A DNA stretch of 64,000 nucleotides from Gracilinanus agilis (taxonomy: Eukaryota). Each line of letters starts with the position of its first letter. The stretch's first letter is position 1. The stretch is from NCBI RefSeq assembly GCF_016433145.1, contig NC_058131.1:485677229-485741228 (forward strand). Direction: 5' to 3'. Below are positions 2,698-26,982 of the stretch, piece after piece. The position numbers were made by a program, and so were the translations under genes. The notes under the pieces are model-generated. The model saw nothing but the letters and a program-made list of their open reading frames with translations. It ran no database searches and had not been told where the DNA came from.

Positions 2698-2715
2698 ATG
2701 TCAGTCAAAGTCCAG
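2698..2715 (+). CDS. NRXN3: NRXN3 SS1 microexon, 18 nt, phase 1-1, (D)VSQSP
   Basis: Long pyrimidine tract, then tgcctcaacag|ATGTCAGTCAAAGTCCAG|gtgagt (strong donor). With a preceding G it reads GAT GTC AGT CAA AGT CCA G. Confidence 0.9.
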
Positions 2716-3034
2716 GTGAGTCTTTGTGTTTGACTGAGAAAGGGAGAATCCTTTCTTTATTTTGGATATGCATGTTTTGTGTGAATCTGTTTTTGCTGGG
2801 GGGGGGGGAATGATACCAGAGAATCTGATTTTTAGCACTGGAAAGAAGCCTTAGAGGCAATCTAATTGAAACCCTTCATTTTACAGATTAAAAGAAAATA
2901 ACAACAGAGCCTCAGAGAGTTAGTTTCTCAAGACCACTTAATAAGTGGTAGAACTATAAATTAAACAATAGGGATTCTTGTTGGATTTAGAATAACCTTT
3001 TTGAAGATAATCAAAAGATTATCCCCATCTCATA

Positions 3035-3205
3035 ATATATGCACATATACACACATAAATGTATATATAAATGTATATATTGTGTATATATGATGTATAT
3101 ATGCATATACACACATATATAAGTGCTTATATAAATATATATGTGTAAATGTTATACATATATAAATGTATGCATAACATACATTTATATGGTTATATAA
3201 TTATT
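3035..3205. repeat. TA/CA-rich low-complexity tract
   Basis: Degenerate (TA)n and (CATA)n repeats. Confidence 0.85.
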
Positions 3206-3324
3206 TCCTTCTTGTTCCTTTTTCAGTTTCACATATAATCTTTTTTATTTATAAAACATTATTTCTTGATGATTGTTAAATTTGGAATTAAAGAATTAAA
3301 TTAAAAAAGAAAGGTTTCATATTC

Positions 3325-3860
3325 ACTTAGTCAACAGTTATTTATTAAGTGTTTATTTTATGTCAGGCTACCCTATGCTAAACTCTAGGGCTTCAGAGAA
3401 AGGAAAATGTAATCCCTGCCCTCAAGGAGTTTACATTCTGATGGGAAGAGAGGATAAGTAAGTAACTAGGTACATATAAGATATGTAAAGGGTAAGCTGA
3501 GGGCAGTTAGGTGGCACAGTGGATAGATCACCAGGCCTGGAGTTGTGAGGATCTAAGTTCAAATCTGGTCTCAGACATTTCCTAGTTGTGTGACCCTGGG
3601 CAAGTCATTTATCCCTGTTTACCTAGCTCTTGCCCTTCTGCCTTAGAGTTGTTACTAAAACAGAAAGTAAGAGTTTTTTTTTTTGTTTGTTTTTTGTTGT
3701 TTTTTTTTTTTTTTTTTAGGGTAAATTTGGAGGTAGATGAAAGGAGACTGAAAAATACCTATTATAGAGGGTGGGATTTGAATTGAGTCTTGAAGGAAGC
3801 CACTATTTAATGGATTTTGGGTATACCTAGAAAGTGAAGGCTGAAGCTTTGGGAAAATGA
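3325..3860 (-). mobile_element. L2 3' remnant interrupted by a SINE and poly-T
   Basis: tatttattaagtg...ccctgccctcaaggagtttacattctg is typical of the antisense L2 3' end. Confidence 0.6.
3501..3675 (+). mobile_element. SINE1/SINE2_Mdo-like SINE
   Basis: GGGCAGTTAGGTGGCACAGTGGATAG...GTTCAAATCTGG...GTGTGACCCTGGGCAAGTCA. Confidence 0.8.
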
Positions 3861-4334
3861 TTTTCAAATCATTCTCCAGTTATAAATCAACCAGCTTGTT
3901 GAGCATGTTAGCCTTATTCTTCTCATCTCAGCTTCTCAATTGTTAGGTACTGACCATTTCAGGATCAGGGCTGTATTTTGGATAATATGATATATCTCAA
4001 AGAGTTTTCTAGTCATATAACAAGAAAAAAACTGTCCTTTTGATAATCTATTTTTATCTTTCTAAATTGCATACATCTATTTTTTCTCTTAAGCTATGTA
4101 TATGCCATGGTCCATTTGTGTTAACCTGCCATTTGCAAAAACACATATGAATGGGTAGATGGAACTGACTCAGGTTTGGATGACTATTTAAGGACATTCA
4201 AAACCACTGGGGCTATTAGCTTTGAATTGAGTTTACTGAGATATTGATTTGAACTAAAGAGAATAAGTAGCCGTACATCCCATTCCTTCCCCCTTGCCAC
4301 AATAGGAATGAATCCAGTCCAACCCTTTGTAATC

Positions 4335-4537
4335 CTCTTTGGGGTTTTCTTGGCAAAGATACTGGAGTGGTTTGCTGCAGATCATTTAACATTTGAGGAA
4401 ACTGAGGCTACCAGGGCTAAATGACTTGCCCAGGGTTACACAGCTAGGAAGTATCTGAGGCCAGATTTGAACTCAGTAAAATGAGTTTTTCTGACTCTAG
4501 GCCCAGCACTCTACTCACTGAGCCACCTAGCTGCCCT
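4335..4537 (-). mobile_element. MAR1-like CORE-SINE
   Basis: ggggttttcttggcaaagatactggagtggtttgc plus core gaggaaactgaggc. Confidence 0.75.
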
Positions 4538-23916: not shown

Positions 23917-24746
23917 GTAGGTCCTTGATGGTCTTATTTTCCTCTCTGCCTAGCCCCAGAGCCTTTCACCTCCACTCCACTTCCTTTGGCTGGTCATAGT
24001 AGACATTGCTGCTGTTGGCTCTTTGCCTGTCCTGGCTGCCCTAAGGTGGGGGGCAGCTACTAGAAACATTATGGATCCTCAACATGCTGAATTACTCCCC
24101 TCTGCCCTCTTCATTCCCTTTGCTTTCCCATGCTCCACTACCATTTGTCAGACCAGAGGCTGTGTCCCTGCGGTGCTAGGGACTATGCCTCTGAGGAAGA
24201 AGCATGAAATGAAGCATGACAGTGGTGATAATGGGGGTGAATGAAGCTAATTTCAGAGCAAGAAAACTGGTAACTTCCTTCCCTCCCTCTCTCTTCCCCC
24301 TTCCCCTGCTGAGGGAGGGGGGGGCATTGGCCTTTTCAAACCCCCATCCTTTTGTCTTTCCCCTATTTTTCATTGTCCAGTACAAACACTCTGAAATTCT
24401 GCCTGATAAAATGCAGCCCTTGGGGGTATATTTTTATTAAAGGACTATATATGTACATATGCATTTATATGAAAATAAGAGCAACATTCTTACAAGAACA
24501 TGCTAATACCCTCATGGCATGATTCTAACTCATTATATACCCAGAAGAAAACTGCATATAAAGGTCTGTAAATTCAGCATCTGCAACCTAAAATATTCAA
24601 ATATGCATGGAATAAAATGTGCAGGAAATTCAGCTCAGCTAAGCACAGGGTGGGCTGTGAATGGGCCTTTAAAAAAATAAAAAATTTTCCACATTATCAG
24701 CCTAAATCAAGGTTCAACAACTGAGCTGTTTTAAAATTATCTTATT

Positions 24747-24748
<2 letters not shown>

Positions 24749-24798
<50 letters not shown>
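24749..24798. repeat. (AC)25 microsatellite
   Basis: Direct tandem repeat. Confidence 0.97.
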
Positions 24799-24800
<2 letters not shown>

Positions 24801-26784
24801 GAAAACCTCCTACTCAATTGCTGGTACTATTTTTCTTGGATCCTGCAATGATTGAAGGATGAATCTACCAACCTCACCCTGGAGATTAGTTCCCCTCTTT
24901 ACCCCTGCCTTTTATCCCTTTTGAAAACATAAGGAATCAACTATTCACTTAGAGGTTTGTCTTGCCCAAGAGGGAAAGAAAAGCAGAGAGGTCATCTTCG
25001 GTTGCCTCTTATGTTGCCAAAAATGTTGTTATGGCCTCTCATGGCAACTTTGGTCTTTAAAATCAAAGATAACACAGGAGAGCCAATCTTCTTCCTGTGA
25101 CTCCTTTTAACCTGTTATATCACATATTTCTGAAAAAATTAAAGGAGTAGGACCAGACCAGGAGCCCAGAGGGCTAAGATGCAATAAAGCTAGGGAGATT
25201 GTCGTGTTTCCCAAAGGTTAGCTCAGGAAGTGAGGGAATGGGGAATTGTCCTACTATAGAATTCTTTCACCCAATGTAGCCAAGTGAGGGCTTTGGATCT
25301 CCAGATATTTCATAGACCAGGTGTATGCATTGCAGCATGATATTGAAAAAATGAAGCTAGAAGAGTGGATAGAAAGCCAGTTCAAAAGGTCCCAACAAGA
25401 GGTAGTGCCTTAATTTGTATTGCAGGCGAATAAGGGCAGCAAGCAGTCACAAGTGAAAATGATGAAATGAATATGTTTAGGGTTAAATTTGAGGTTGACT
25501 AGCTTTCAAAGTGATTTAGGAGTGGTAGTGGTAGTGGAGGATCCATGACAGTATGGAGGAGAAGCTGCTGGCCTAAAATTGAGAAAAAGAAATTTTTAGA
25601 ATTAGAAAGTCAGATCAGAAGGCAAGTTGCACTGGAAAAAGTAAGTCTTGGATGGAGAGATAATTGGTTGCTATTGCTCACTGTCTAACCTTATTGTGCT
25701 CATTATTTCCTCGCAGTGATTTTGAAAGAAAATATATTATTAATTTGGTTTTCTCCATGGAACAAGTTCCAGATAGATGAGAAAGTTGAGAAGGCCTTCT
25801 TTTGTCTTGATTGAGGTTATTCAACATTCATTGCTCCCGATCTCCTTCCAGGAGAATGGTTGGGGAGGATCCAATGCTTCTGAGCCAGAAAGTTGAATCC
25901 TTACATTGGAATGAGTGCTACTTGGACAAACTAAAGTAAACACCTCTGTGATTTTTCAGCCATGGTTAAAGAATAGTATTTGGTGTTCCATGGACTCCAC
26001 AATAATGTGTCTTAGCATAGATGTAGTAGACTCACTTGAGATAAGCCAGTAAAAGAAATGTTTGTCTAGGGCCATGTTTGAATAATGAAAAGTATTAGGG
26101 TTGAAGAGTGAAACAGGAATCCTTTTACAAAGAGGAAAATGCAGAATTCTTCTGGGTGGACAGTGTTAGGAACCTCTTAAGTTATTGGTTGCTGTTGAAG
26201 CAGGTTTAACATTTGTTCTTCTACTAATTTCCCTCCCCAGGCAGAGTTTGCCACTTTCTCCCCAATTGCCAATTCCTATTTAGCTGACAAATCTTCAAGC
26301 TTTTGGTCTCTCAATTGTTCTTGTCCTTCCATCTTCTTCCTCTATTCAACCGAAGAGAAAACAATCGATATCTTGTATTCATTGAGCCAGCAACATCCTT
26401 TTGGTTGCTCATGAAAATATATGAGCATACTTATGTATGTCATATGTATGTTCATTAGTATGTGTATATACAAATTTGGTAATCATGGCTCATATTCATG
26501 TCTGGATAATATTGGAGAAATCATTTCCCCAATGACTTTCCCCTTACTTTTTTAACCAGTGTTCTATGTTTGCATTCGGTTTGGCTTAATGTGTATGTTT
26601 TAACACGAGTATGATTCTGCATGCCCATTTTGTCATCTTCTTAGGCATGGTCTGGAGAAGATGTGAAAAAAGGGAAGAGCTTAAATTGAACAGTGAGTAG
26701 GACCAAATTTGCTGGTCACACTGCTGATCATCATTTTAAGCTTTCCCTTTTGTATTTGTGCTGTGTTCCCAGAATGTGTTGTAG

Positions 26785-26970
26785 TTCTATTGCCATCACA
26801 ATTGTTTGTGTGTGTGTGTGTGTGCTTATGTGTCACATTTCTTTGTGACGGTGTGCCATGTCCTGATGTTTTGTTATCCTTGCTCTCCCTGCTCTCCTCT
26901 CTTTTGCCGCCTCCATGGTGGACGTCTTTGTTACCTCTGCTTAATCGGACCTTCCACTTCATTTCTATAG
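26785..26970 (+). promoter_or_regulatory. Extended 3' splice-site region of the 12-nt exon
   Basis: 184 nt without AG (26785-26968); (TG)9; CTGAT 26863-26867; YGCY-rich pyrimidine tract; TGCTTAAT 26938-26945. Confidence 0.7.
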
Positions 26971-26982
26971 GTAGAAGTAAAG
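26971..26982 (+). CDS. NRXN3: NRXN3 SS1 microexon, 12 nt, phase 1-1, (G)RSK
   Basis: cttccacttcatttctatag|GTAGAAGTAAAG|gtagag. GRSK is visible in track ORF 26709..27068. The donor is weak but order and peptide fit SS1. Confidence 0.85.

What the first reader, a model, noticed from the sequence alone, without database searches (positions are those of the whole stretch)
2698..26982. Hidden gene: three microexons rebuild the complete NRXN3 SS1 insert in a marsupial
Seen: 18-, 30- and 12-nt AG/GT-bounded phase-1 exons spread over 24 kb that splice to DVSQSPGLSHLMMSEQGRSK. Established: neurexin alpha SS1 is a combinatorial cassette of small exons between EGF1 and LNS2. From memory, placental NRXN3 has D or G where this sequence has S in DVSQ-S-P, which would be a lineage difference creating an SP motif. 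These 60 coding nt are invisible to ORF calling and may be missing from gene models.
Basis: partly seen in the sequence, partly recalled or inferred. Interest (0 to 1): 0.75.

Follow-up and report, generated by a model that had tools for sequence, protein, structure and literature searches.

The report
Neurexin SS1 microexons, ordinary and conserved
Three tiny exons (18, 30 and 12 bases) in this window are the well-known alternatively spliced "splice site 1" cassette of an alpha-neurexin gene, most likely neurexin-3, so this is normal conserved gene structure and not a new gene.

Summary
Exons at 2698-2715, 23887-23916 and 26971-26982 are AG/GT-bounded. Each is a multiple of three bases long, is entered in phase 1 and ends in G. 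They read (D)VSQSP, (G)LSHLMMSEQ and (G)RSK.

It is not chance. A blind splice-signal scan picks exons 1 and 2 among only four candidates on the strand. The exon-2 and exon-3 patterns appear in essentially no shuffles.

A published human NRXN1-alpha sequence carries the paralogous insert DNNVE-GLAHLMMGDQ-GKSK. Four non-human metagenome contigs carry the same 30-nt exon. Two NRXN1-type contigs show the same three-exon layout (15/18, 30, 12 nt). One contig with the Ser variant (GLSHLMMGEQ) shares seven collinear conserved blocks with this window, on both sides of the N gap at 13011-13140. So the gap lies in an intron, and order and orientation hold across it.

The locus is therefore an alpha-neurexin SS1 cassette that is not NRXN1. 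The NRXN3 label is inferred, not shown. I did not search the joined peptide, by rule.

An earlier scan note places opossum NRXN3 1.45 Mb downstream in the same genome. Already known; low interest.

The parts
2698..2715 (+). SS1 microexon 1, 18 nt, phase 1-1, reads (D)VSQSP, ends in G
   Evidence: Sequence. Donor CAG|GTGAGT is 9/9 to consensus and the pyrimidine fraction is 0.80 (99th percentile of all AG sites). It aligns with the CAG acceptor of the 18-nt form of the NRXN1-type exon in L003 and L004.
2619..2697 (+). Long C/T tract and 3' splice region of exon 1, with TGC at 2687-2689 (-11)
   Evidence: The TGC about 9-11 nt before the acceptor is invariant in the alignment with L003 and L004.
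2769..2774 (+). TGCATG (RBFOX-type motif) 54 nt downstream of the exon 1 donor
   Evidence: There are 21 TGCATG on this strand of the window, so a single motif is weak evidence.
13011..13140 (.). Assembly gap inside the 21.2-kb intron between exons 1 and 2
   Evidence: Blocks conserved with the single N-free contig L002 lie in the same order and orientation on both sides of the gap. Its letters were not inferred.
7205..10051 (+). Three conserved intronic blocks before the gap (7205-7255, 8601-8688, 10014-10051)
   Evidence: blastn against L002: 74-83% identity, collinear.
13759..13836 (+). Conserved intronic block just after the gap
   Evidence: blastn against L001 and L002: 76% over 78 nt.
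22984..23118 (+). Conserved intronic block about 0.8 kb upstream of exon 2
   Evidence: blastn 72% over 138 nt; alignment A5.
23887..23916 (+). SS1 microexon 2, 30 nt, phase 1-1, reads (G)LSHLMMSEQ, ends in G
   Evidence: Pyrimidine fraction 0.85 and donor AAG|GTAGGT 8/9. 25/30 nt identical to L001 and L002: three synonymous codon changes and one Ser-to-Gly change.
24486..24665 (+). Strongest conserved intronic element, 0.6 kb downstream of exon 2; contains a conserved GGCATGAT
   Evidence: blastn against L002: 185 nt, 75%, E 2e-25; alignment A4. No exon-like frame was seen.
26971..26982 (+). SS1 microexon 3, 12 nt, phase 1-1, reads (G)RSK, ends in G
   Evidence: 11/12 nt identical to the 12-nt exon GTAAAAGTAAAG of L003 and L004. 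Its own splice signals are weak: pyrimidines 0.725, donor 6/9.

Best explanation
The three segments are the small cassette exons of alternative splice site 1 (SS1) of an alpha-neurexin gene that is not NRXN1, most likely NRXN3. SS1 encodes the linker between the first EGF-like domain and LNS2.

Shown from the sequence: each exon is a multiple of three bases long, is entered in phase 1 and ends in G. The junction codon is therefore always G plus the first two bases of whichever exon comes next (GAT = D, GGC = G, GGT = G). Any subset of the exons can be included without changing the frame or the residues each exon contributes, giving inserts of 0 to 20 residues.

Inferred: inclusion is set in neurons by the usual microexon machinery. 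The supporting features are long C/U tracts (PTBP-type sites), a conserved UGC before exon 1 (SRRM4-type), GCATG motifs (RBFOX-type) and conserved intronic elements.
For: - Exact exon anatomy.
- Splice signals alone pick out exons 1 and 2.
- Shuffle controls.
- Human NRXN1-alpha, printed in PMC12707391, has ...LTEK-DNNVE-GLAHLMMGDQ-GKSK-GKEEYIATFKG..., which gives the same order and a 7/10 and 3/4 residue match for exons 2 and 3.
- Genomic loci L003 and L004 carry DNYVE or DDRTE (15/18 nt), GLAHLMMGDQ (30 nt) and KSK (12 nt) as separate AG/GT-bounded exons.
- L001 and L002 carry GLSHLMMGEQ, and L002 shares seven collinear conserved blocks with the window. The NRXN1-type loci share none outside the exon.
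- Nrxn1 and Nrxn3 microexons are already reported as alternatively included in mouse (PMC7821500).
- SS1 is a canonical, dynamically spliced site of Nrxn3-alpha (PMC10063607).
Against: - No flanking constitutive neurexin exon (EGF1 or LNS2) lies in the window, so the gene context is not seen directly.
- No NRXN3 protein could be retrieved. The word search was blank for 40-128 aa fragments, the PDB search was blank, and no paper prints the peptide.
- The NRXN3 label therefore rests on exclusion of NRXN1, on long AT-rich introns, on memory, and on an unchecked AI note (s1-190028).
- Exon 1 has almost no residue similarity to the NRXN1 exon; only the D/E start, the size and the position agree.
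Confidence: 0.85

Rival explanations
1. The exons are the SS1 cassette of NRXN2, not NRXN3.
For: Nothing run here separates NRXN2 from NRXN3 directly. No NRXN2 or NRXN3 sequence was obtained.
Against: Introns of 21 kb, 3 kb and more than 37 kb at 38% GC fit the megabase NRXN1/NRXN3 genes better than the compact GC-rich NRXN2 (my own knowledge). The orthologous contig appears to come from a sauropsid host (CR1-like ORF tail), a group in which NRXN2 is poorly represented in ordinary AT-rich sequence (from memory).
Confidence: 0.08
2. The exons are the SS1 cassette of NRXN1 itself.
For: Same architecture and a related peptide.
Against: NRXN1-type exon 2 is GLAHLMMGDQ in human, L003 and L004 alike, while the window has GLSHLMMSEQ. 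The window shares conserved intronic blocks only with the Ser-type locus. One metagenome, Ga0065711, holds both types on separate contigs, so they are paralogues.
Confidence: 0.02
3. Chance look-alikes or decayed relics that are no longer spliced.
For: No RNA evidence was obtained. Exon 3 has weak splice signals, shared with 115 other candidates on the strand.
Against: Shuffle controls. Intact frames, a 9/9 and an 8/9 donor, and top-percentile pyrimidine tracts. Mostly synonymous change relative to L002, and conserved flanking introns.
Confidence: 0.03

Closest known systems
Human NRXN1-alpha SS1 insert (DNNVE-GLAHLMMGDQ-GKSK), as printed in PMC12707391
   Same: Same order of three short segments, the same D/G/G junction residues, an HLMM core and a [KR]SK tail. 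Genomic NRXN1-type loci L003 and L004 show the same 15/18-, 30- and 12-nt phase-1 exons.
   Different: Three of ten residues differ in exon 2 and one of four in exon 3, and exon 1 is almost unrelated in sequence. No intronic similarity. NRXN1 also has a 34-residue upstream SS1 segment that was not found in this window.
Nrxn3 SS1 and Nrxn3 microexons described in mouse (PMC10063607; PMC7821500)
   Same: Same site, same kind of exon, and very probably the orthologous exons.
   Different: Identity with the mouse or human NRXN3 peptide could not be checked with a tool. It rests on memory only.
Ser-type locus in metagenome contigs L001 and L002 (probably a sauropsid host)
   Same: Exon 2 is 25/30 nt identical, with GLSHLMM shared. 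Seven collinear conserved blocks.
   Different: Gly in place of Ser at residue 8. The exon 1 and exon 3 orthologues lie outside the DNA held.
Neuronal microexon programmes (SRRM4/nSR100, RBFOX, PTBP); PTPRD meA/meB as another synaptic adhesion code
   Same: Exons of 30 nt or less, frame-preserving, with long pyrimidine tracts, a UGC near the acceptor of exon 1 and conserved flanking introns.
   Different: Regulator dependence was not tested. Exon 2 has no TGC within 80 nt upstream.

Membership tests
alpha-neurexin SS1 cassette exons | Peptide homologous to a documented SS1 insert | tested here: met
   Compared with human NRXN1-alpha printed in PMC12707391: exon 2 matches 7/10 residues including the junction G, and exon 3 matches 3/4. 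0 of 200 shuffles reach the exon-2 match.
alpha-neurexin SS1 cassette exons | Several small exons, each 3n long and in the same phase, so that any combination stays in frame | tested here: met
   18, 30 and 12 nt, all phase 1-1 and all ending in G.
alpha-neurexin SS1 cassette exons | Same exon layout in related neurexin loci of other vertebrates | tested here: met
   L003 and L004 have exons of 15/18, 30 and 12 nt. L001 and L002 have the 30-nt exon.
alpha-neurexin SS1 cassette exons | Position between the exons that encode EGF1 and LNS2 | not testable with these tools
alpha-neurexin SS1 cassette exons | Alternative inclusion in brain mRNA | not tested
No listed run was on record as RNA.
NRXN3 orthologue | Not the NRXN1 locus | tested here: met
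   Ser-type against Ala-type exon 2. Conserved introns are shared only with the Ser-type locus. Both types occur in one sample.
NRXN3 orthologue | SS1 peptide and flanking exons match annotated NRXN3 and not NRXN2 | not testable with these tools
   No NRXN3 or NRXN2 sequence was reachable. The only pointers are an AI note (s1-190028) and memory.
SRRM4-type neuronal microexon | UGC motif close upstream of the acceptor, behind a pyrimidine tract | tested here: inconclusive
   Exon 1 has TGC at -11, conserved in L003 and L004. Exon 2 has none within 80 nt. Exon 3 has TGC at -33 and -66.

The most novel reading that the evidence does not exclude
The 12-nt exon is constrained as RNA and not only as protein. 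GTARAAGTAAAG is 11/12 nt identical between this Ser-type locus and the NRXN1-type loci of two distant vertebrates, including every synonymous position. It begins with GT directly after its acceptor AG and contains a second GTAAAG. It could therefore act as a nested or recursive 5' splice-site device that sets a 0-, 6- or 12-nt outcome, and not as a plain cassette exon.
Probability: 0.15. Interest if true: 0.45.

Novelty: already known. Interest (0 to 1): 0.12.

Why it matters
It matters little beyond annotation quality. Microexons of 12-30 nt are easily lost by gene predictors and short-read aligners, so these coordinates are useful for checking the neurexin gene model of this genome. The biology is established: SS1 is a combinatorial neurexin splice site, and its functional effect appears small (no effect on rescue in PMC10063607). 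The by-products are modestly useful: conserved intronic blocks between a marsupial and a probable sauropsid, and nucleotide-level conservation of the 12-nt exon across paralogues. Both are candidate splicing-control elements.

Tried and rejected
Local scripts and one tandem-repeat run on the window did cover those coordinates.
- All comparisons were made exon by exon.
- PDB phmmer with the stop-free stretch around exon 2: no hit at E <= 10.
- The search for homologous proteins with the same stretch: no candidate of 40-128 aa shares three words. This says nothing about full-length neurexins.
- The search of protein representatives: not run. A 13-residue match cannot reach a reportable E-value against 1.8 billion proteins.
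- Papers: no main text prints a GLSHLMM or SEQGRSK type string. One search was swamped by 'MMseqs' and one exon-number search returned noise. Treutlein 2014 and Sudhof 2017 are not held. The supplements of PMC10063607 hold no SS1 sequence.
- Flanking neurexin exons and the long NRXN1 SS1 segment: motif scans of all six frames found none in the window or in L001-L004.
- Exon 1 orthologue in L002: not within the DNA held.
- Human-contig check: L003 (DNYVE) and L004 (DDRTE) differ from human NRXN1 (DNNVE). L001 comes from the same sample as L003. L002 is identical to L001 around the exon and carries a CR1-like ORF tail. No Alu-like match was found. I took none of them for human.
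Full report
**Observation.** The three segments are in the sequence exactly as described.
- Exon 1 is 2698-2715 (18 nt), preceded by AG and followed by GTGAGT.
- Exon 2 is 23887-23916 (30 nt), preceded by AG and followed by GTAGGT.
- Exon 3 is 26971-26982 (12 nt), preceded by AG and followed by GTAGAG.

Read in phase 1 they give (D)VSQSP, (G)LSHLMMSEQ and (G)RSK. Every exon ends in G, so the junction codon is G plus the first two bases of the next included exon: GAT, GGC or GGT. Any subset therefore stays in frame, and each exon contributes the same residues whatever precedes it.

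**The assembly gap.** The window has N runs at 13011-13140, 27447-27586, 30290, 40074-40205 and 60351-60479. None touches an exon. The gap inside the finding lies about 10 kb from exon 1 and from exon 2, deep in a 21.2-kb intron, so the reading frame does not depend on it.

I tested continuity indirectly. A single N-free contig from another species (L002) shares conserved blocks with the window at 7205-7255, 8601-8688 and 10014-10051 before the gap. It also shares blocks at 13759-13836, 22984-23118, 23856-23926 and 24486-24665 after it. All seven are in the same order and orientation. Both sides of the gap therefore belong to one locus in the expected arrangement. I did not infer the gap's letters. 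An exon hidden inside it cannot be excluded.

**Is it more than chance?** AG/GT bounding alone means little, because about 440 AG-N30-GT segments occur in the window on both strands together. Three tests show more.
- A scan using splice signals only gives four candidates on the + strand and five on the - strand. The criteria were at least 80% pyrimidines in the 40 nt before the AG, a donor matching at least 7 of 9 consensus positions, and a length of 3-60 nt. Two of the four + strand candidates are exons 1 and 2. Exon 1 has a 9/9 donor and exon 2 an 8/9 donor. Both pyrimidine tracts are above the 99th percentile of all AG sites.
- Exon 2 matches the NRXN1 paralogue peptide at 6 of 9 full codons. 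No segment in 200 shuffles did so.
- Exon 3 has weak signals of its own (pyrimidines 0.725, donor 6/9), which it shares with 115 other candidates. However, the pattern AG-G..[RK]SK..G-GT is expected 0.002 times per shuffled strand and occurs once, 3 kb after exon 2.

**What it is.** A paper prints a human NRXN1-alpha construct containing ...CSQ-EIKFGLQ...PLTEK-DNNVE-GLAHLMMGDQ-GKSK-GKEEYIATFKG... (PMC12707391). This is the SS1 insert between EGF1 and LNS2. The window's three exons line up with its last three segments.

To see the genomic layout elsewhere, I scanned the metagenome collection with a degenerate pattern for exon 2 including its AG and GT. The pattern has one hit in the window and none in shuffles. 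Four contigs matched.
- L003 and L004 encode GLAHLMMGDQ. Upstream they have a 15/18-nt exon reading DNYVE or DDRTE, with a CAG|AAG tandem acceptor. The 12-nt exon GTAAAAGTAAAG (KSK) lies 731-786 nt downstream. All are AG/GT-bounded. The three-microexon architecture is therefore a conserved property of neurexin SS1, not something peculiar to this window.
- L001 and L002 encode GLSHLMMGEQ, the Ser variant seen in the window. Their exon 2 is 25/30 nt identical to the window's, with three synonymous codon changes and one Ser-to-Gly change.

Only the Ser-type locus shares intronic similarity with the window. The NRXN1-type loci share none beyond the exon. One sample, Ga0065711, holds both types on separate contigs. 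They are therefore paralogues, and the window is orthologous to the non-NRXN1 one.

**Which paralogue.** NRXN3 is the likely answer, but I could not show it with a tool. The evidence in its favour is:
- NRXN1 is excluded.
- The introns are 21 kb, 3 kb and more than 37 kb at 38% GC, which does not fit the compact NRXN2 gene (my own knowledge).
- An earlier follow-up note puts an intron of opossum NRXN3 1.45 Mb beyond this window in the same genome (s1-190028; unchecked here).
- I recall NRXN3 carrying a GLSHLMMSEQGRSK-type sequence, which is a lead only.

No NRXN3 sequence could be reached. The exons are too short for the protein searches, and no paper in the library prints the peptide.

**The contigs are not human.** L003 and L004 differ from the human NRXN1 exon 1 (DNYVE and DDRTE against DNNVE). 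L001 comes from the same sample as L003. L002 is identical to L001 around the exon and carries an ORF ending ...VVKHWHRLPREAVDVLSLEVLKARLDGALSNLV. From memory this is the typical tail of CR1 elements of birds and reptiles. No Alu-like sequence was found.

**How it probably works.**
- Shown: the frame logic above, strong splice sites for exons 1 and 2, and conserved flanking intron.
- Inferred: neuron-specific, combinatorial inclusion controlled by microexon regulators.

The cues for the inferred part are:
- very long C/T tracts before exons 1 and 2;
- a TGC 11 nt before the exon 1 acceptor that is invariant in the alignment with L003 and L004;
- a TGCATG 54 nt after exon 1;
- a 185-nt element 0.6 kb after exon 2 that is 75% identical to L002 and holds a conserved GGCATGAT.

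Single motifs are weak evidence: there are 21 TGCATG on this strand of the window. In the literature SS1 is a canonical, dynamically spliced site, and Nrxn1 and Nrxn3 microexons are known to vary between neuron types (PMC7821500). SS1 variants of Nrxn3-alpha made no difference in one rescue assay (PMC10063607).

- "Complete SS1": not established. NRXN1 has a further 34-residue segment, and no trace of it is in the window. Only 2.7 kb upstream of exon 1 is available.
- "Ser is a lineage difference": untested. Exon 1 is the least constrained piece in the paralogue: DNNVE, DNYVE and DDRTE vary, while exons 2 and 3 are invariant. One substitution there would be unremarkable. The linker is extracellular, so an SP motif has no obvious kinase meaning.
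- "Missing from gene models": untestable here.

**What failed.** Local scripts and one tandem-repeat run on the window did pass over those coordinates.

**Verdict.** This is a real, ordinary and already known feature: the SS1 microexon cassette of an alpha-neurexin gene, very probably NRXN3. It is useful as an annotation check and is not a discovery.

Noticed in passing
window 26971-26982; L003 1287-1298 (-); L004 6913-6924 (+): The 12-nt exon is 11/12 nt identical between this locus (GTAGAAGTAAAG) and the NRXN1-type loci of two other vertebrates (GTAAAAGTAAAG), including all synonymous positions. It starts with GT right after the acceptor AG and holds an internal GTAAAG. This bears on the separate note s1-176230 about a 0/6/12-nt donor choice or recursive splicing.
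   Followed up: partly
window 24486-24665 and L002 498-679: A 185-nt AT-rich intronic element, 75% identical between this genome and a probable sauropsid contig (E 2e-25). It includes a conserved GGCATGAT and shows no exon-like frame. It is a candidate distal splicing enhancer for exon 2.
   Followed up: partly
window 7205-7255, 8601-8688, 10014-10051, 13759-13836, 22984-23118: Five further short conserved noncoding blocks in the intron between exons 1 and 2, collinear with L002.
   Followed up: partly
L003 6821-6838 (-) and L004 4491-4508 (+): The NRXN1-type exon 1 has a tandem CAG|AAG acceptor, which allows 18-nt (EDNYVE) or 15-nt (DNYVE) forms. The window has a single CAG acceptor that aligns with the 18-nt form.
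   Followed up: partly
L002 about 7409-7624 (- strand): An ORF tail resembling the end of CR1 LINE ORF2, which suggests that the host DNA in metagenomes Ga0181612 and Ga0065711 comes from a bird or reptile. This is from memory and was not tested with a database.
   Followed up: no
window 22154-22881: An AT-rich minisatellite (periods 41-134 nt, up to 9 copies) about 1 kb upstream of exon 2, next to the conserved block at 22984.
   Followed up: no
window 47873-48210: A stop-free stretch with L1 reverse-transcriptase-like motifs (...[21 protein letters not shown]...), seen in the frame listing. It is already the subject of note s1-176262.
   Followed up: no
window 25634-25645: GGAAAAAGTAAG reads GKSK and overlaps a perfect GTAAGT, but it has no acceptor AG before it. 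I took it as chance.
   Followed up: yes
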